Shown piece by piece: positions 21,555 through 59,117 of a stretch of DNA of 64,000 nt. Every line of letters starts with the position of its first letter. Positions within the stretch are counted from its first letter, which is position 1. The notes below the pieces were generated by a model. That model did not search any database. It saw nothing but the letters and a program-made list of their open reading frames with translations, and was not told where the DNA came from. The translations under genes and the position numbers were made by a program. The DNA lies in the NCBI GenBank assembly GCA_013239625.1, contig MU054338.1, positions 6,610,724-6,674,723 of the forward strand, given 5' to 3'. The stretch comes from Lama guanicoe. Taxonomy: Eukaryota.

Positions 21555-24500
21555 CAGAGACAGACAGAGAGATAGAGAGACAGAGAGATACATCTCAAAC
21601 ACATGCCAGGGCAACAGCTATGAAATCAATTTATTTGGGTCCCAACAAGCATTTTTATTTATTTTTACTTAATTTTATTTTTTTAACAGGCATTTAATTT
21701 AAATAGCTCATGTCTTTTTACTTACTACTTTTAGTTTTATGGCAGATAACAGATTCACGTGGTTCCAAAATCAAAAAGTATAAAAAGGTGCAAATGTCAA
21801 ATCTCCATTTACCTAGTGTTGGCTGAGAGTGGCTGCTGTTTGAAGTGTTGACACGTGAGTGCTCATTCAAAAGCCCTGGGATGGGGAGGTGTGCTTATGA
21901 GCCTCACTGCACACACAAGGAAACTGAGGCTCAGTGGGGTGAAGTCAGGGTCCACAGCTCGTGAGCAGAGAAGCCGGGAGTCCAGCTCCCAAGTCCCTGT
22001 TCTTAACAAGCTACATCCTCCTCCCCAGATCCTAAGTCCACTGCCCCTTTACCAGTTCGAGTCTTTCCACGTTTAAAATTTGAAAATTTAAAATAACACA
22101 ATAGAGGGGAGGGTATAGCTCAGTGGTAGAGTGCATGCTTAATATGCACAAGGGCCTGGGTTCAATCCCCAGTACCTCCATTAAAAAAAATTAAATAAAC
22201 CTAATTCCCTCCCCGTCCCCAAAAATAAAATAGCACAATAGACTAGAAAATAGCAGAGTACATCACTCATGGTACCTACTGCTCTGTGAAGCCTTCATAG
22301 AGGTGTCATGTATGTGAGTAACTGAGTGTATGCTCCTCCCGTGTGTGCACCAGTATCTATATTTGTCTGTGTACCTATGTGTGTGTCTATGAGCATATGT
22401 ATGTGTGTCCTTATCTCTGTGACTGTGTGCGTGTACCTGCGTGTCTGTGCATGCATCTGTGTGTCTGTGTGTGCCTGTGTGTGCACATGTGTATCTCCAT
22501 GAGTGAATGTCTGTAAATATCTGTGTTTGTCAGGATCTGTGCCTGTGTGCATATCTGTATGAGGGTGGATGGCTGTGTGTGAGCATACGTGGATGTCTGT
22601 ATCAGTACATGTCCCTCTGTGTCCCTGTGTGAATTTCTGTGTAACATGTACATCTGCATATGTGTGTCTGTTTGCCTATGTGTGTATCTGGGTGTCCCTG
22701 TCAGTGTGACTGCCAGATGCGTCTGTCTAGCATCGTGTAGGAGCCTGTGAGTCCTGGCTCATAAGAGCCCACTGCACTCATGTCTTCCCAACTCTATGTG
22801 TCACACAGCTTGAAATCAGCCAAAGTGGGAGTATTTACACCAGAGAAACTGGCAAATGCTGGCAAATGCTCCGTGTCGGGGCTCCCCGACCCGACTCCAC
22901 CCCACCCCGAGAGCCCAAGCATTATTAGCATTTGCCAGCATACCAGGAGTTAGATGGGGGCCTCCTTGTTAAATATTCTAAAAGATGTTAAATATTTCCA
23001 TAGCAGCCAGTCTGCAGGCCCTGGTATGACAGCTTAAGATCCAGCCTTGAGAGATGCTCCCCAGAGGCCCAGGGCTTGGTATGTGTGCCTGCAGGGGGTG
23101 CTGCAGCTGCAGCTGGGAGAAGACCCAGCCTAGGGCTGCTGAGTCCCCCCAGACAATGCAGAGTGCCCTGAGAGGCTGCCCCAGGCAGGTGTACCGTGAG
23201 AGCCTTGGGCACCTGGGACTGATTGGGGCAGGCTGGACCAAGCTGTGGGAGAGGCCAAGACCAGAATCCAGGCCAGAAACTGCGAGGGGTCAGGGGAGTT
23301 CCTAGTCCTGAGATCAAGGAGACAAGTGGACACATAGGTCTGGAGTTTAGGAAACCCACCGTCTAACCCCTGCTCTACCCTTCCCTGGCTGTGTGTTCTT
23401 GGGCAGATCACCTCCCCCTCACATCTTTGGGCCTCAGTTTCTCTAGCCATAAAAGGTATGAATCGTAGAAGAGATTTCACTGGGTTGCTGTGTGAATGGA
23501 GGTGGATGACATCTGGAAAGTCTAAGGAAAACTCAAACAGGAAATGTTATGATTTCTATTAACATCATAAGTGGCCATAAACTTTAGTCCCCTTCCTTCC
23601 TTTTTTTCCCCCCTTAACTGTGAGGTCCTTGGGAACAATGACTTTTATTTCAATGCCTGGCAAGGTGTCTGACAAAACAGGAAATAATAATCACGATGCT
23701 AATGACAATAGCATTTATACTAGCACATGTCTAAGCCCTGTAGGTTTATTAACACAAAGTTCACAGTTCTGACTGGGCCACCCTGGGCTCCTCTCCACTC
23801 CCTCGGGTGGGGTTTGTGGGGCTGGCTGGTAAGTTCTTCTCTCTCTTTCACACCCCCCAACCCAGGGTTCCCTGAGCGCGTGGAGCTGGCCCCCCTCCCC
23901 CGCTGGCAATCGGTGGGCAGGCACTTCAACCTGAGCTGCCTGGTGTCCGGAGGGGCGCCCAGGTCCCACCTAGCGGTGGTGCTGCTCCGCGGGGAGGAGG
24001 AGCTGGGCCGGCAGCCAGTAGCAAACGGGGAGCCCGTCGAGGTCATGGTCACGGTGCTGGCAAGCAGAGACGACCACGGCGCCAATTTTTCTTGCCGCAC
24101 GGAACTGGACCTGCGGTCCCAAGGGCTGGGACTGTTCCAGAACCATTCGGCCCCCAGGAAGCTCCGAACCTTCGGTGAGGGAAGGGACTGCAGACGGTGG
24201 GTAATGACCTGTGCCAGAGTATGGGTGCCCTGGTCGCGGGATTCCTGAGAATGCGGTGGCCTGGACCTCAGGAGCTTCTGGGAAAAGATGCCCTTGGCTA
24301 TTGAGAGGGGTAGCCTCAGATGGGAGGCTCGAGGCTGTAGGAACTTTTGAGAAGGCTGTGAGTGTGTGTCCTGGGAAGGGGGCGATGCGGGATGCAGAGT
24401 CCTGGGAAAGATGGACTCCTGTTTGGGGGATGAGTGTCATGGGAAAAAGGGTGTCCAAGGCTGTGACACCGCCTCCTGCTCTCTCCTACCCTTCTTTCAA

Positions 24501-40446: not shown

Positions 40447-43886
<3,440 letters not shown>

Positions 43887-44139
43887 TAAAGACAGCTGGA
43901 TCGTCCTAGACACTCACGGCCCCAGCGCCGGGACTGGAGAAATAGCCAAGTTGCCAGCCCAGCCCAGAGGAGGGACAGGCCTGAGAGAGAGATGTCGGAA
44001 GCAGCCAGAAGGCTAAAACCCCTGCATCAGAGAGAGCCCATGTCCAGGCTGTGGTGGGGACAGCGCCCCTACTGGGGCAGCCTCCCTCAAGCCCCCTGAG
44101 AATGGGGATGTGGATGGGGTGGAATCTAATTGGAGCAAC

Positions 44140-44145
44140 AATAAA
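44140..44145 (+). terminator. FDX2 poly(A) signal AATAAA
   Basis: About 250 bp after the FDX2 stop. Confidence 0.8.
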
Positions 44146-44299
44146 ACTGTCTCACAAACCTCCAGCATCTTGAATGTCCTTGTGAGGAAGGTGGGGACAG
44201 AGGGGCGGGCCCTGGGGTCTACAGCTGCATCTTCCATACCCCCAGCCTTCCTCTTCCACAACGGTTTTGGGCCAGCGGGAAACTGAGGTAGAGGCCTTA

Positions 44300-44784
44300 A
44301 GGTGAAGGCCCGAGAGCCTGAAGATCAGCGTGGCAAGGCTCCGCCCCGCAGCGCGGAGGGATTTGGAGGGCTCCAGGACGCCCTTGGCCGCAAGGGGTAT
44401 GCAAGCCCCCTGAGCAGAGTCAGGGGAGGGGGAAAGGGACAGAGGCTGGCCCAAGAGTGGGGGCTTGGAAGCCGGTGCCCAACATCGTCCACCAGAGGCG
44501 CCCGATCCCACAGGCGGCGCCCCACTCAGGTGGCGCTCCTTGCACCCTCCGCCAAAAGCGCCCCCGCCCCACGCAGGTGAAGCTCATCCGGTGGGACTGG
44601 CGTGGGCGGAGCAGGGCGAGATTTGGGAAGGGGGCCTGGGCTGGGGTGCAATGGAGGCTGAGCCAGTCCCGGACTTCATGCTGCGAGAGCTGCTGGCGCC
44701 ACGCTGTCTAGACCCCGAGCTGCCCCCGGAACCCCGGGCCCAGCGGGCACCGAGGACTGCTGGATGCCTCAGACCCAGTGGCAG
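44300..44784 (+). promoter_or_regulatory. ZGLP1 promoter/exon 1 with clustered Smad GC elements
   Basis: CpG-rich. GGCGCC at 44497, 44516 and 44695; GTCTAGAC at 44706-44713. Confidence 0.6.
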
Positions 44785-46856
44785 GTACGTTAAGGAGCGG
44801 CCCTTCCCCCAACCTGGCCCAGTGGTCAAGGGATCATGACCTCTGGCTCCTGGGGTTATCCAGGGGTCAAAATGTTAGTTACTGGTACTGACAAGGAAGA
44901 GGGCCTCGTCCCCAGGGATACTTGGGGGTCATGTGGGGGTCAGAGGCTATGCCATTCTCCTTGCCTTGTTCCATATCTCTGAGACCCAAGTAGGTGCTGC
45001 TCGGGGAAAGGGCTGACCACACTGCCCCTTGTCCCCAGGTCCTTCTGGCCTGCACACCAGGATTCAGTCACTGCACTGCGCTTCCTCCAAGAGACAGCAG
45101 AGGGGCTGGCCCAGCCTCCCACGTGGGACACCCAGGCCCTGGGGCCCTGCTGGGAGCTGAAGGCCCTGGGGACCCTGGGACCCCCTCCTCTGGCCAGGGA
45201 TGCCAAGAACATGCTGACCCCAATCAGCCAGCAGTGCCACAGCCCAGGGACTCCCCCGGCCTCTTCAGCTCAGCCTCAGAGGAGGCCCCGGAAGCAGTTG
45301 AACCCCCAGCGGGGTGCGGAGAAAGTGGACCCCCAGTTCGAAGGGGTGACCCTGAAGTTTCAGATAAAGCCGGATGCCAGCCTCCAGATCATACCCAGCT
45401 ACAGGTAGGAGCCAGCCTGGGCAAGGGCACCCTTTATGCAAGTAATGATAAAAGCACAGAGGCGTGGGAACAGGTGCTCCCAGCATCTGCTCAAGGACTC
45501 CTATGCCAGCCCTGCATTACAGACAGCCCCGACTCTAAGCAAGACATCAGGCTGGTGCCAGTCCCTGTCCCTGCTGCTGGAGACCAGTCACATCCAGGTC
45601 CAAGTGCAGGTCTCCTCCTAATGAAATAGTCTGACAGTACCCAGGGCTGCTGCTGTGGTAGATTTTTCCAGTAATGATAATAGCTCCCATTTGTCAGACA
45701 GGACAACGACAATACGAGATACCGGAGCACTTGACGTCTATGGGCTCTCTGAAGCCTGGGGAAGCCCACTTTACAGGTGCAGAAAATGAGGTGTAGAGGG
45801 TGAGATCACTTGTCCAGGGTCACAAAGTGAGGACTTGGGAGAACTGAGCTTTCAACCTGACAGGTTGGCTCCAGACTTATTACCTCTTCACATGATTATG
45901 ACTGTGATTACCAATGAGGGGCCAGGCCTTTCAGTTGTCAGATGCCTCCTCGGGGACTGCCCGATACCCTGGCAGGAAATACTCATTTGCGGGCTGTCTG
46001 GGGCAGGGTACAGACCTCCTGATGCTAACGCCTGTCTACTCCCCCAGCCTGGCCTGCAGCAGCCGCTCTCAGGGTGCCCCGACAGGCCCTGCCGGGGGCC
46101 CAGAGGCCAACCTGCGAGGCAGCGAGGCCCTGGGTAAGTCCTGGAGACTTGAGAGCTATAAATATTTGGGGGAGGGTATGGTTTCCTTTCCTCCTTATCT
46201 TTCTTCCCAACCTGCTTCCCTATTTAGACCCATCCAGGAGGAGTCACAGCGCCCCCCTCCACTCAGGCTGAGTCACCCCCACCCCCAGCTTCCTCCTCTG
46301 CCGAGCTTTGCCATCTGTCTCCCTTCCTGGCTTTCCCTATGTCTTAGATCTGGCCTAGGGCTGGGTGGGGCCTTAACAGAGGACCCCCCCGAAAATGCCC
46401 ACCGTACCCGACACAGGCCTCCTGAGCTTGGACTCTTGGCCTCTGACCCCTGCCCTTTGGCTTATGCCCTTTCAGGGCCCCGACGCTGTGCTTCCTGTAG
46501 GACCCAAAGGACCCCACTCTGGAGAGATGCTGAAGATGGGACCCCTCTCTGCAATGCCTGTGGAATCAGGTCCTCAAAAGGGAGGAGGGAATTGGGGTGG
46601 GGTGACATCAGTCCCTGCTTAGCCAGTGAGGGGTAGTGGGAAGAGAAAACACCCACCTCTTGGGGAAAGTGGCTCCCTGGTGGTGATTTCCAGGCTGAAT
46701 GTGGGTTCCTTGCATCCCCACCCCAGGTACAAGAAGTACGGCACTCGGTGCTCTAGCTGCTGGCTGGTGCCCCGGAAAAGTGTCCAGCCCAAGAGGCTAT
46801 GTGGCCGATGTGGAGTGTCGCTGGGCCCCCACCCAGTCCCAGCTCAGGAAGGGTAA
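44651..46856 (+). CDS. ZGLP1: GATA-type zinc finger protein 1 (GLP-1), germ-cell/gonadal transcription factor
   Basis: Exons: 44651-44784, 45039-45404, 46048-46133, 46476-46569, 46727-46856. GATA finger CASCRTQRTPLWRDAEDGTPLCNACGIRYKKYG; conserved block RRPRKQLNP...FEGVTLKFQI. Exon 1 (MEAEPVPDFMLRELLAPRCLDPE) resembles the mouse N-terminus as recalled. Confidence 0.95.
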
Positions 46857-47142
46857 GCCCTTCCTCACCCAGCCGAGCCTGTCCTGCCTCAGTTTCTCCC
46901 TGGGGAGAACGGGCAGAAGCCCTCGGAGGGGAAGGAGCTTGGGTCTTGAGGGATCCAGTCAGCCTCCTCTCTGCCCCCTCCCCTTTCAGAGACGCCAGTG
47001 GAGGATGCAGGCCCCAGACCTTTTGGCTCAGGGGGTCACTGGCCCCCTCCTTGGTCCCTGCTCCAATCAGGCTTGGCTGAGCTCCCCCCACCCCCCCAGA
47101 AATGCTGTCAACAGCGATACTCATATTGTTAATAGCAATAAC

Positions 47143-47148
47143 AATAAA
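47143..47148 (+). terminator. ZGLP1 poly(A) signal AATAAA
   Basis: About 290 bp after the ZGLP1 stop. Confidence 0.75.
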
Positions 47149-49800: not shown

Positions 49801-49842
49801 GAATAAATAAATAAATGAATAAATAAATAGAACAATAAATAA
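49801..49842 (-). promoter_or_regulatory. AU-rich element in ICAM5 3'UTR
   Basis: Minus strand reads ttatttattgttctatttatttattcatttatttatttattc, with several overlapping ATTTA. Confidence 0.6.
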
Positions 49843-49897: not shown

Positions 49898-52800
49898 TCA
49901 TGCTGACGTCAGCTGGATGGCGAAGACCTCGCCCCCCGCCGGCGCCTCCGCAGTGCCCGCAGCCTCTGTTCCACCTTCCGCGCCGGTGCCCGCGCTGGCG
50001 CCGCCGCCAGCGCCGTTGAGACACACGGCCTCCCCGGAGCTCTCCGCCTCCTGCACGTTATACTCGCCCTTCTTGCAGGCGGTGGACTGCACGTAGAAGG
50101 CCAGCCCGGCCCCCGCGGCCAACAGCGCCGCGCCCCCCGCCGCGCCGCCCACAGCGACCCACAGCCACGGACCTGCGGGATGGAGATGCTCAAAGAGGGG
50201 GGACGAGCTCGGGGCTCGCCCCACCCGTCGGCATGCCAGGCTGGGCCACTCCTGTCCCCTCCCCGAAGGCACAAGTTCAGTCCTCACGAGCCTGGCAGGG
50301 AGCCCCAGGGAACTCAGCCTTGGAGGAAAGGAGAGACCCCAGTAAGACCACTCGTAACACTGCTGTGACCCTGACCCGTTTGACCAGCTACCCCATCACG
50401 GAGGGGGAGGGGGCAGATATAAACCCCTAGCCATGGAAATACCTACAAGTAAACCAACTCATCCTCATATGGATCAGGGTGGAGGGGACCCGCTGATTCC
50501 TCCACCCTAGAAAGTCCCTAGCCATGGAGATACCTACAAGTAAACCAACTCATCCTCAAATGGATCAGGGTGGAGGGGACCCGCTGATTCCTCCACCTTA
50601 GAAAGTCTCCAGCCCCAGAGATACACGAAATGGGAGAGGGGATATTGTTGGGGTCCCCCGCCCCCATCCTCTGCCCCTGGTCCCTCTCCAACACCCCTTC
50701 TCTGCAGCAACACAGTGGAGGGGAATTGGATCAAGTCTCCACCAAGCAGAACCCACCAAAAGTTAATGAAGTCCCTCCCCGTAGCAGTCACAGCCCCGGA
50801 GGATCCCTTTCCTTGGGCTCTGGTCAGCTCCCTCTCCATCCGCTTCCCACCCCCAACCAGCCCTCAAAGCCCCACCGTCTGGGAGCCCCTAACTTCTACT
50901 CTGGCTCACTTCAGTCTCATCTGTGGGAATGGAGAGCGAGGTAGGGACGGGGTCAAGAATTCCAAGGCGCAGGTCACACCTCCCTGGAGATCCCTCGCCT
51001 CACCCCCACACCCAGTCGCCACTTACCAGCCACGCGCACGGTGATGCGCCGTGTGTGGCGCCCATGCGCGTTGGTGGCTGCGCACTCGTACTCGCCGCCG
51101 TGGCTGCCCATGGCGCCCGCCACGCTCAACGTGCTGTTGTTGCTGGACAGGCCGATGTTGAGCGCCCCCGGGGGCGCGCGCCAGCTGATCTGGGCCGGGG
51201 GCCATGCCTCGGCCCTGCAGGTCAATGTGAAGTTCCCGCCCGGCCGCACGCCTCCCGGAGGTGAAGCAGCCAGCTCGGCCACCACCGGGCGGTCTGTAGG
51301 GGACAGGAGGTTGAGGGTGTCTCACCGCTGACCAAGTGCCCCCTTCTGCCCAACACAATCTGAGACCATCCCTCCTGAAATGGGCAGGCAAGGGTCCTGC
51401 CTCCTATCAGAGGCCCCTCCCCCTACAAGTGGACTATTGTCAGGACTAAAATCCTTAGACCTGCTTCACTGAGTGGAAGGAGATGGGGAACCAGGCCAAT
51501 GCACTTCAGACCCAGAATTTGAAGGTGCCATGATCTTGTTCCGCAGAGTTTTCATTACTCTGAGGTTTAGGCCAGGATTCCTTGTCCCCAGAAATGCGAC
51601 TCGGGGAGATGCCCTTGAACTCCACTGGGCAATCCTACCTCTTCTAGTCACTGTTCTGGAGACTGAATGCCCTCTATCTGGTGCTTCCCCCACTCACATT
51701 CCACGCCCACGGTGACAATCCGGGCATCCGTGCCGTGCGGGTTGGTGGCCAAGCAGCGGTAGCTGCCTGCATCCTCTCGGGACACGCGCAGCCGCTGTGG
51801 CCGGGGCGCGCCCTCCCTGGAGCAGCGCACTTGTGGCGAGGGGCGACCCCGGGCGGAGCAGGCCAGCGCAGCAGCCTCAGCCCCTTCCAACCACGTCTGG
51901 TGACTTGGGCAGGTAGATTCATCCATTTCCGGTGGTGCTGCAAAACAGCCATAGCAGGAGAGGGGGTGGTCAGGAGGGGCTCGGACCCAGGACACCCCCT
52001 ATTCCCCGCCCGCCCACTTGGGCCTGGCTCACATTCCGCGCTCACGGAGACCGTCTTGACCATGGATCCATGCCGGTTGGTGGCATTACAGATGTAGGTA
52101 CCAGGTGCCAGTTCACTAGGGATTCGGGGGGTTCTGGCACTAGGGCCTGGGGGTGCCAGTGGCAGCAGCACCCCCTCACTGGTGCCGCCAGAGCCAATGC
52201 ACTCCACACTTGGCTCTGGCTTTCCATCAACCTCACAGGAAAATAGTCGCCCAGAACCTTCCACCCATGTCCAATTGCTGGGGCAGCTCAGCTCCTCAAA
52301 ACTGGGGCCATCTGAGGAGAAGAGGTCATACAGGGACTGGAGGTCAGAAGAGGGTTATTCTGACATCCCTCATCTTGCCCCATGTTGTCCCCACTCACAT
52401 TCCACCGTGACAGCCACATTTTTGGCTGCAGAGCCTCGAGCATTGGTGGCTTCGCAGCGGTAGGTGCCCGCGTGCTCCCGGGCCACACGCAGCAGGCCCT
52501 CGATGATGACCCCAGCCTCCCCAGAGCGCATGCAGCTCACGTTGGGAGGTGGGACCCCATGGGCCACACAGCTCAGGGAGGCCTCTGTTCCTTCCAGCCA
52601 GGTAATGCGTTCAGGGCAGCCCACACTGTCCAGCGCTGGTGCATCTAGAGGGGAGTGTTGTTGATTTGGGGGGTTTAGGGACCGGTGTAATGTCTCTAGA
52701 CCCCTTTTCCCATCCCAGGGCAGCCAGGAAGCATTGGACAGTCTATGCTCCACAGAGGGACACTGAACCAAAGGAGTTTTGCACCAGTCGAGTCATGCAC

Positions 52801-58045: not shown

Positions 58046-59117
58046 CTAGGCCCGGGACTGCATCAATAGGCACTTTCGCAGGTAGAGGGCCCCCACGACG
58101 AGATGGATCACCACAAAGACTGCGATGGAGGTGGAGGCCAAGGCTTTGGATGCGGGACTCCAAGCTGGAGGCAGGAGGCGAGAATTAGAAACTGAGCACT
58201 TGGAGGTGTGATGACCCGCATGGACATGCTCTCTTGGCCTGCGCACCTTCTTGAGGTCACGACCCTTCCCCACTCCTCCCAGGATTATAAGAATTCCTCA
58301 CCGAAAGCTGTCAGCGTCATGGGTGCCGAGCTACTGAGGACCACCAGGCCATCAAGATTGAGGTGGGCGTGGCAGGTCACTGGCTGCCCGAAGTCACTGG
58401 GCCTGGCATGAAGGGTGTGAGTCATCGTCACATTGGCCAGATCCACGCTAGTGTAGCGCTCCAGGCTTTCTGAGTAGATGACTTGACCACCGCGCCTCAG
58501 AGTCACCACCAGGAAGCCCACGGGGAACACGTGCGTCACGTGGCAGCGAAGAGTGTACTCATCGCCCACTAAGACCGGAGGCTCCAGGATCACGCTGCGT
58601 GGCTGTTCTAAAGCAAGAGGGGACTGCTGGGCAAAATCCGAGGGCTCCCCCTAGAGCGGCTGTCAGCTACCCCAGCAGTCCCCCTTCCCTCACCCCAGCC
58701 CGGCCTGAGCCCCTGTCCCTCACTGTAGGCGGTAATCCTGGCGGTGGCCTCCCGCGTTTCTCCTGCGCAGGTGACGAAGCATTGCACATCGGAGCTCCAG
58801 GCCCTCACATCCAGCAGCTGGTAGGATACCCAACGGGGCCCACTGAGCGTCTCGCCCCGCGGCAGCACGGTGCGGAGGCTGAAACCCTCCGGTAGGGGGC
58901 AGCTGCTGCTACAGTTGAGCCACAGTGAGCCCCCCGGCCGCACGGCCTTGAACTCGGGTCTTATGCGCACCCAGAACGGTGCTGAGGTCTCCGAGGGTGC
59001 GGGAGATCTACCTCCCGTTCCTTGCGTCCGGGTACCCCAGAGCCTCCGCCTGCTCCCAGTTGGCTGGTAGGAGGCTGCCAGCAAAAGCAGCAGAAAGAGG
59101 GGGAGCAGAGACCCCAT
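58046..59117 (-). CDS. ICAM4: Intercellular adhesion molecule 4 (Landsteiner-Wiener blood group glycoprotein), 2 Ig domains; 3 exons
   Basis: Exons (minus strand): 58724-59117 (MGSLLPLFLL; APFWVR; WVSYQLLDVRAWSS), 58302-58607, 58046-58164 (TM, short tail). Lies between ICAM1 and ICAM5. Confidence 0.96.

What the first reader, a model, noticed from the sequence alone, without database searches (positions are those of the whole stretch)
44490..44713. Perfect composite BMP-Smad response element inside ZGLP1 coding exon 1
Seen: TGGCGCC-acgct-GTCTAGAC at 44694-44713, i.e. GGCGCC, exactly 5 nt, then GTCT, with GTCT extending into the full palindromic SBE GTCTAGAC. Two more GGCGCC (44497, 44516) sit just upstream in the promoter. 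Established: GRCGNC-N5-GTCT is the bipartite Smad1/5/9-Smad4 element, and ZGLP1 is induced by BMP to drive oogenic fate. Inference: this could be the direct BMP input to ZGLP1, double-coded with the peptide LLAPRCLD. As recalled, that peptide is the best conserved part of exon 1 relative to mouse (ELLASPCLD). I did not spot this spacing at other GGCGCC sites in the window, but did not scan exhaustively.
Basis: partly seen in the sequence, partly recalled or inferred. Interest (0 to 1): 0.75.

Follow-up and report, generated by a model that had tools for sequence, protein, structure and literature searches.

The report
Smad motif inside ZGLP1 first exon
A textbook-looking BMP/Smad binding motif really does sit in the first coding exon of a camelid ZGLP1 gene, but most of it is dictated by a deeply conserved peptide, so whether it is a working BMP switch remains untested and moderately unlikely.

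Summary
TGGCGCC-ACGCT-GTCTAGAC lies at 44694-44713 (+). It is the only GGCGCC-N5-GTCT or GRCGNC-N5-GTCT in 64 kb, and two more GGCGCC lie at 44497 and 44516. The site occupies codons 15-21 (L-A-P-R-C-L-D) of exon 1 of a ZGLP1 orthologue. This rests on a GATA Pfam hit and a 44/45 exon-1 match to an alpaca ZGLP1 protein, so the genome is camelid.

The peptide ELLAPxCLDPE is the best conserved block of exon 1 in 75 aligned orthologues. It is also kept in a lizard and two rays whose residues cannot encode GGCGCC, and 11 mammalian rows exclude the motif. Peptide conservation therefore does not need the DNA motif.

Six of the ten specified bases are fixed by the amino acids. Resampling synonymous codons gives the strict motif in 2.6% of exon-1 versions, and the version with the palindrome in 0.13%.

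The site ends GTCTA, not the GTCTG of the ID-gene elements.

No paper held links ZGLP1 to such a site.

Verdict: a real motif and a testable candidate. It is more likely a coding by-product (about 0.7) than a functional BMP element (about 0.2).

The parts
44695..44700 (+). GGCGCC, the palindromic GC-rich Smad1/5 half-site. It is formed by the third base of Leu15 (CTG), Ala16 (GCG) and the first two bases of Pro17 (CCA).
44701..44705 (+). 5-nt linker ACGCT: third base of Pro17, Arg18 (CGC) and first base of Cys19. Residue 18 is the variable position of the peptide: Pro in 53 of 75 rows, Arg in 6 of 75.
44706..44713 (+). GTCTAGAC, the full palindromic Smad-binding element. GTCT comes from Cys19 (TGT) and Leu20 (CTA); AGAC comes from Leu20 and Asp21 (GAC). 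The fifth base is A, not the G of ID-type elements.
44687..44719 (+). Codons 13-23, encoding ELLAPRCLDPE, the best conserved block of ZGLP1 exon 1.
   Evidence: L14 69/75, L15 69/75, A16 67/75, P17 67/75, C19 63/75, L20 72/75. Also present in marsupials, a lizard and two rays.
44651..44784 (+). ZGLP1 exon 1 coding part, from the ATG to the last exon base before the GT donor.
   Evidence: (44/45 identical to alpaca ZGLP1 protein P0022)
44497..44521 (.). Two upstream GGCGCC (44497-44502 and 44516-44521), 13 bp apart, in the presumed promoter or 5'UTR. Further GGCGC/GCGCC words lie at 44532 and 44558.
45039..45402 (+). ZGLP1 exon 2, 100% identical over 122 aa to the alpaca protein.
46475..46570 (+). 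ZGLP1 exon carrying the GATA-type zinc finger.
   Evidence: PF00320, 46.7 bits, cut-off 26.8
46725..46853 (+). ZGLP1 exon with the end of the GATA finger and the second Cys-rich stretch.
44140..44145 (+). AATAAA downstream of the upstream ferredoxin-like gene. It is probably that gene's poly(A) signal and leaves about 500 bp for the whole ZGLP1 promoter plus 5'UTR.
   Evidence: its role as a poly(A) signal is inferred.

Best explanation
The 20-base stretch is first of all coding sequence. It encodes the core (L-A-P-x-C-L-D) of an ancient, protein-level conserved N-terminal motif of the germ-cell GATA-like factor ZGLP1. The Smad-type composite motif is most likely a by-product of that peptide plus four synonymous codon choices in this camelid lineage: Leu CTG, Ala GCG, Cys TGT, Leu CTN. 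Two further choices, CTA and GAC, give the palindrome. Shown: the motif, its reading frame, the gene identity, the depth of peptide conservation, and the fact that the peptide is kept where the DNA motif is impossible. Inferred: that the synonymous choices are chance, and that the conserved peptide acts as a short protein interaction or activation motif.
For: Six of the 10 specified bases of GGCGCC-N5-GTCT (8 of 14 with GTCTAGAC) are fixed by the residues A, P, C, L and D. The peptide block is the best conserved part of exon 1 in 75 aligned orthologues. It persists in Pogona (L-C-P-P-C-L-E) and in the rays Mobula and Pristis (L-S-P-P-C-L-D/E), where GGCGCC cannot be encoded. In 14 of 74 rows the residues exclude any GRCGNC-N5-GTCT in this register; these include three deer with Tyr19, Saimiri, Galeopterus, Jaculus and Octodon. 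The element cannot therefore be a general mammalian requirement. With the peptide held fixed and codons resampled, the strict motif arises in 2.6% of exon-1 versions and the degenerate one in 4.8%. With 54 compatible rows, about one carrier is expected by chance alone. The site lacks the G of GTCTG found in ID1/2/3 and Xenopus id3 elements, and the window has no ID-type match. Published genome-wide work finds the 5-bp composite neither sufficient for BMP regulation (PMC3203580 passage) nor common among bound sites: 45 bound regions carry the ID-like motif across datasets, and bound composites lie mostly in intergenic enhancers (PMC11907993 section 8).
Against: The motif uses rare codons of this gene: GCG is 2 of 26 Ala codons and CTA is 2 of 26 Leu codons. 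The full GGCGCC-N5-GTCTAGAC arises in only 0.13% of codon resamplings and in 0 of 5000 local shuffles. It is the only such composite in 64 kb, and it falls 45 nt into the one gene of the window known to be BMP-induced. Three GGCGCC within 204 bp is itself unusual (81 of 5000 shuffles). The linker has G at +3, as in the stronger ID1 and ID3 linkers. The promoter is squeezed into about 500 bp, so a regulatory site spilling into exon 1 is plausible.
Confidence: 0.7

Rival explanations
1. The site is a working, dual-coding BMP response element. A phospho-Smad1/5 MH1 domain binds GGCGCC and a Smad4 (or second Smad1/5) MH1 domain binds GTCT five bases away, back to back. Helped by the two upstream GGCGCC, the complex activates the compact ZGLP1 promoter from just downstream of the start site when ovarian BMP2 reaches germ cells.
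For: The sequence matches GRCGNC-N5-GTCT exactly, with the 5-nt spacing and same-strand orientation that reporter work shows to be essential (PMC11907993 passages; PMC3439458). The match is rare against local composition (21 of 5000 shuffles) and against codon resampling (2.6%; 0.13% with the palindrome). Rare codons are used. Zglp1 is BMP/BMPR1A-dependent in mouse germ cells, and a review draws it as a Smad4-Smad1/5/8 target. GGCGCC is locally enriched. The promoter is compact.
Against: There are no occupancy, reporter or synonymous-site conservation data. The SBE is GTCTA, not GTCTG. The residues of 11 mammalian rows exclude the motif. The peptide alone raises the chance of the motif about ten-fold over random DNA. 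The composite motif is not sufficient for BMP regulation. Bound composites lie mostly in intergenic enhancers rather than promoters. BMP induction has been shown in mouse, not in camelids, and the mouse DNA could not be read here.
Confidence: 0.2
2. The palindromic GTCTAGAC serves TGF-beta/activin-type Smad2/3-Smad4, or the GC-rich words serve generic GC-box factors of a CpG-rich promoter, rather than the BMP branch.
For: The palindromic SBE can take two Smad2/3/4 MH1 domains and is the TGF-beta-responsive unit in reporters (PMC11907993 passages). The region has GC 0.69 and CpG o/e 0.55-0.61.
Against: One palindromic SBE is only a half-unit in those reporters. Nothing read here links ZGLP1 to activin or TGF-beta. 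There are no binding data.
Confidence: 0.05

Closest known systems
ID-type BMP-responsive composite element of ID1, ID2 and ID3 (GGCGCC-N5-GTCTG)
   Same: Same GC-rich half-site GGCGCC, same 5-nt spacer, same strand order, and G at +3 of the linker as in ID1 and ID3.
   Different: The fifth base of the SBE is A, not G. The site is inside a coding exon just downstream of the start codon, not in an upstream enhancer. No binding or reporter data exist.
Xenopus id3 / ventx2 BRE and Drosophila BMP silencer element GRCGNC(N5)GNCT (brk)
   Same: Fits the consensus fully, including T at position 15 and the 5-nt linker that the Schnurri complex needs in flies.
   Different: In flies this syntax silences through Schnurri. 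Whether vertebrate Schnurri homologues act here is unknown. The Xenopus id3 element has GACGCC and GTCTG.
Drosophila BMP activating element GGCGCCA(N4)GNCV
   Same: Begins GGCGCCA.
   Different: Position 15 is T, which the V of the activating element excludes. The window has 0 matches.
Transcription-factor sites embedded in coding exons ('duons'; recalled concept, no paper read here)
   Same: A motif that overlaps codons, so amino-acid and binding constraints would act on the same bases.
   Different: Dual use is only hypothesised here. The amino-acid constraint is shown and the binding constraint is not.

Membership tests
Vertebrate ID-type BMP-responsive composite (GGCGCC-N5-GTCTG) | Palindromic GC-rich Smad1/5 site GGCGCC | tested here: met
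   44695-44700
Vertebrate ID-type BMP-responsive composite (GGCGCC-N5-GTCTG) | Exactly 5 nt between the two half-sites, SBE on the same strand 3' of the GC site | tested here: met
   Linker ACGCT at 44701-44705. The requirement is taken from PMC11907993 and PMC3439458 passages.
Vertebrate ID-type BMP-responsive composite (GGCGCC-N5-GTCTG) | SBE of the form GTCTG | tested here: not met
   The site reads GTCTA. There are 0 matches to GGCGCC-N5-GTCTG in the window.
Vertebrate ID-type BMP-responsive composite (GGCGCC-N5-GTCTG) | Smad1/5 and Smad4 occupancy and BMP-dependent reporter activity | not testable with these tools
   No ChIP, CUT&RUN or reporter data are reachable. ZGLP1 does not occur in the main text of PMC11907993, and its supplementary tables were closed.
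Vertebrate ID-type BMP-responsive composite (GGCGCC-N5-GTCTG) | Conservation of the element across species beyond coding constraint | tested here: inconclusive
   Only proteins were available. 54 of 74 rows permit the motif and 14 exclude it. Synonymous positions could not be read.
Bipartite Mad/Medea element GRCGNC(N5)GNCT (BMP-SE syntax) | Sequence consensus including T at position 15 and a 5-nt linker | tested here: met
   GGCGCC ACGCT GTCT. Consensus from a PMC7669266 passage.
Bipartite Mad/Medea element GRCGNC(N5)GNCT (BMP-SE syntax) | Recruitment of a Schnurri-type cofactor | not testable with these tools
   None.
BMP activating element GGCGCCA(N4)GNCV | V (not T) at position 15 | tested here: not met
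   Position 15 is T; 0 matches in the window.
ZGLP1 (GATA-type zinc finger protein 1) gene | GATA-type zinc finger exon and an orthologous N-terminus | tested here: met
   PF00320, 46.7 bits against a cut-off of 26.8. 243 proteins at E<=1e-5, the listed ones named GATA-type zinc finger protein 1. Exon 1 is 44/45 and exon 2 is 122/122 identical to alpaca protein P0022.

The most novel reading that the evidence does not exclude
The conserved N-terminal codons of ZGLP1 double as the gene's direct BMP sensor. A Smad1/5-Smad4 composite site is written into the synonymous positions of L-A-P-x-C-L-D, just downstream of a promoter squeezed into about 500 bp. Signal input and protein motif would then be held by the same 20 bases. 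If the GCG, TGT and CTN choices prove conserved in mouse and human, this would be the first cis-element tying BMP directly to the oogenic-fate determinant. It could be tested cleanly by synonymous mutation.
Probability: 0.2. Interest if true: 0.7.

Novelty: new member of a known kind. Interest (0 to 1): 0.35.

Why it matters
How BMP switches on ZGLP1, the factor that commits mouse germ cells to the oogenic fate, is not described at the level of DNA elements in anything I could read. The searches were ZGLP1+SMAD+BMP (31 papers, passages of five read), ZGLP1+SMAD1+promoter (8 papers) and ZGLP1+GGCGCC (0 papers). Reviews draw Zglp1 as a Smad target without naming a site. A precise, synonymous-mutation-testable candidate site would be useful if it holds in mouse and human. 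If it does not, the case is a quantified caution. A conserved peptide can raise the chance of a perfect-looking composite transcription-factor motif about ten-fold over random DNA, and peptide conservation must not be read as motif conservation.

Tried and rejected
- translated one base out of frame (start 44652). One search corrected it (start 44651).
- **Synonymous-site conservation.** I used orthologous proteins instead. These can only say where the motif is possible or impossible.
- **Read evidence.** I wanted the transcript start, the exon 1-exon 2 splice and variation among relatives. The look-up of sequencing runs listed 24 runs. Fourteen DNA-type holders had at least 0.93 of the words.
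- **Papers.** The Nagaoka 2020 Science paper is not held; what I say of it comes from other papers' citations. The supplementary tables of PMC11907993, which list Smad-bound regions with composite motifs, were closed and may bear on whether ZGLP1 is among them. One search (five terms, at least two required) returned 624 papers, and none of the 15 listed holds ZGLP1; I do not use it for any claim of absence.
- **Other syntaxes.** ID-type (GTCTG), the activating element, the GGCGCC homocomposite and GGCTCC/GGAGCC heterocomposites each have 0 matches in the window. Only an N6 variant at 24068-24083 (-) and an N4 variant at 58572-58585 (-) were found.
- **Pfam.** It gives no family for the exon-1 or exon-2 peptides.
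- **Earlier findings.** The search of earlier findings by words found nothing.
- **Rejected reading.** I rejected taking the peptide's conservation as evidence for the DNA motif, because the conservation extends to species whose residues exclude the motif.
- **Recalled resemblance.** The conserved peptide resembles hydrophobic-acidic activation motifs. This is recalled, comes from no call and was not tested.

Full report
**What is there.** The + strand reads T-GGCGCC-ACGCT-GTCTAGAC at 44694-44713, exactly as reported.
- GGCGCC-N5-GTCT has this single match on both strands of the 64-kb window (0.13 expected; 12 of 100 shuffles with at least one).
- The looser GRCGNC-N5-GTCT has the same single match (0.50 expected; 37 of 100).
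- GGCGCC occurs 17 times (12.98 expected), including 44497 and 44516.
- GTCTAGAC occurs twice (0.59 expected).
- In the kilobase around the start codon the strict motif appeared in 21 of 5000 dinucleotide-preserving shuffles and the degenerate one in 77 of 5000. Three GGCGCC (0.54 expected) was reached in 81 of 5000.
- The local sequence has GC 0.69 and CpG o/e 0.55-0.61.

**Which gene.**
- An ATG at 44651 opens a frame of 45 codons, MEAEPVPDFMLRELLAPRCLD..., that ends at a GT donor.
- Downstream exons carry a GATA finger (PF00320, 46.7 bits, cut-off 26.8).
- A protein search with the finger exon returned 243 proteins at E<=1e-5 among 245 candidates. The 120 listed are almost all named GATA-type zinc finger protein 1, i.e. 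ZGLP1; 53 sample-only candidates were left out by the tool.
- The alpaca protein P0022 matches exon 1 at 44 of 45 residues and exon 2 at 122 of 122. It maps to five or six exons between 44651 and 47077.
- I therefore take the genome to be a camelid (family Camelidae), and name it no finer.
- Upstream on the same strand lie ferredoxin-like exons (weak Fer2 hit, 18.4 bits, below the cut-off of 21) and an AATAAA at 44140. Promoter and 5'UTR of ZGLP1 thus have only about 500 bp. That this AATAAA is the neighbour's poly(A) signal is inferred.

**Register.** The motif is CTG GCG CCA CGC TGT CTA GAC = L15 A16 P17 R18 C19 L20 D21. Of the ten specified bases of GGCGCC-N5-GTCT, six are fixed by Ala, Pro, Cys and Leu. 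Four are synonymous choices. With the palindrome, eight of fourteen are fixed.

**Protein conservation.** Of the 120 listed proteins, 75 had a blastp match (E<=0.1) to the exon-1 peptide and were aligned. The other 45, mostly N-terminally different or truncated models and non-mammals, were left out.
- Rows are not independent lineages; several genera appear two to four times.
- Residues 13-23 are the best conserved block: L14 69/75, L15 69/75, A16 67/75, P17 67/75, C19 63/75, L20 72/75.
- Residue 18, in the linker, is Pro in 53 rows and Arg in only 6.
- Mouse reads ELLAPPCLD and human KLLAPPCLN.
- The block is also present in marsupials, in Pogona (LCPPCLE) and in two rays (LSPPCLD/E).
- Of 74 rows with residues at 15-20, 54 permit the strict motif and 6 more permit only the degenerate one. 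Fourteen exclude it: three non-mammals and eleven mammalian rows, among them three deer with Tyr19.
- The peptide is therefore conserved for its own sake, and the DNA motif cannot be a universal mammalian feature.

**The right null.** I held the exon-1 peptide fixed and resampled synonymous codons from this gene's usage (100,000 samples).
- The strict motif arises somewhere in exon 1 in 2.6% of samples, the degenerate one in 4.8% and the full version with GTCTAGAC in 0.13%. Uniform codon choice gives similar values.
- Excluding the motif's own codons from the usage table gives 1.2% at this register.
- So the peptide raises the chance about ten-fold over random local DNA. With 54 compatible rows, about one carrier is expected by chance.
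- Against this, the site uses rare codons of the gene (GCG 2 of 26 Ala, CTA 2 of 26 Leu), and the palindromic extension is improbable.

**What is known.**
- I read the abstract, sections 8 and 13, and passages of PMC11907993. GGCGCC-N5-GTCTG is BMP-sensitive in reporters, the 5-bp spacing and the orientation are essential, and G at +2/+3 of the linker is enriched. Only 45 Smad1-bound regions carry the ID-like motif across datasets, and bound composites lie mostly in intergenic enhancers.
- Passages of PMC3203580 say the 5-bp spacer is prominent in bound regions, but genes with the composite are not necessarily BMP-regulated.
- Passages of PMC3439458 give GACGCC-N5-GTCTG for Xenopus id3 and GGCGCC-N5-GTCTG for Id2.
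- Passages of PMC7669266 give the fly silencer GRCGNC(N5)GNCT and activator GGCGCCA(N4)GNCV.
- The site here fits the silencer-type consensus. It does not fit the activator element or the ID-type GTCTG.
- Passages of PMC11829761, PMC11893106 and PMC11555627 establish Zglp1 as BMP/BMPR1A-dependent in mouse germ cells. None names a Smad site.
- ZGLP1+SMAD1+promoter gave 8 papers, of which passages of five were read. ZGLP1+GGCGCC gave 0 papers. The Nagaoka 2020 paper is not held.

**What could not be done.** Four RNA runs hold about 0.3 of the words of 43800-45500. That is compatible with exons 1-2 being transcribed and nothing more.

**Verdict.** The functional reading is a legitimate, sharply testable hypothesis. 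However, the conservation argument offered for it is explained by the protein, and the remaining evidence is one lineage's codon choice. My estimates are:

| Reading | Estimate |
|---|---|
| Coding by-product | about 0.7 |
| Functional BMP-Smad element | about 0.2 |
| Other factor use | about 0.05 |

Noticed in passing
window 44672-44719 (codons 8-23): The N-terminal block of ZGLP1, roughly P-D-F-(x)-L-x-E-L-L-A-P-x-C-L-D/E-P-E, is conserved from rays and a lizard to mammals. No Pfam family covers it. It looks like a short hydrophobic-acidic linear motif. Its function as a protein motif is unknown to me, and it is worth a study of its own.
   Followed up: partly
window 44702-44704 (codon 18): Residue 18 is Arg in the window, alpaca, tarsier and squirrels but Pro in 53 of 75 rows. 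In the window the Arg codon CGC puts a CpG, and a G at +3, into the Smad-motif linker.
   Followed up: no
window 49898-50287 (-): On the opposite strand, tail to tail with ZGLP1, an ORF has a transmembrane-like stretch and an Ala/Gly/Glu-rich tail. From recalled synteny it is probably the last exon of ICAM5. Pfam gave no hit.
   Followed up: partly
rows P0038, P0072, P0081: Squirrel database entries named 'ferredoxin-2, mitochondrial, transcript variant' carry the ZGLP1 N-terminus and GATA finger. This suggests annotated read-through or mislabelling between the adjacent ferredoxin gene and ZGLP1, and fits the very short intergenic gap seen here.
   Followed up: no
window 46958-47077 (+): The alpaca gene model adds a further C-terminal exon that matches here, after the frame that ends near 46853-46856. 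An AATAAA lies at 47143. Alternative 3' ends of ZGLP1 are possible.
   Followed up: no
window 24068-24083 (-) and 58572-58585 (-): These are near-miss Smad composites with the wrong spacing: GGCGCC-N6-GTCT and GGAGCC-N4-GTCT. They show that off-spacing versions occur elsewhere in the window.
   Followed up: no
window 49802-49839 (+): A run of overlapping AATAAA hits, i.e. an (AATA/AAAT)-type simple repeat, lies between ZGLP1 and the opposite-strand gene. AATAAA overall is 52 against 8.9 expected in the window.
   Followed up: no
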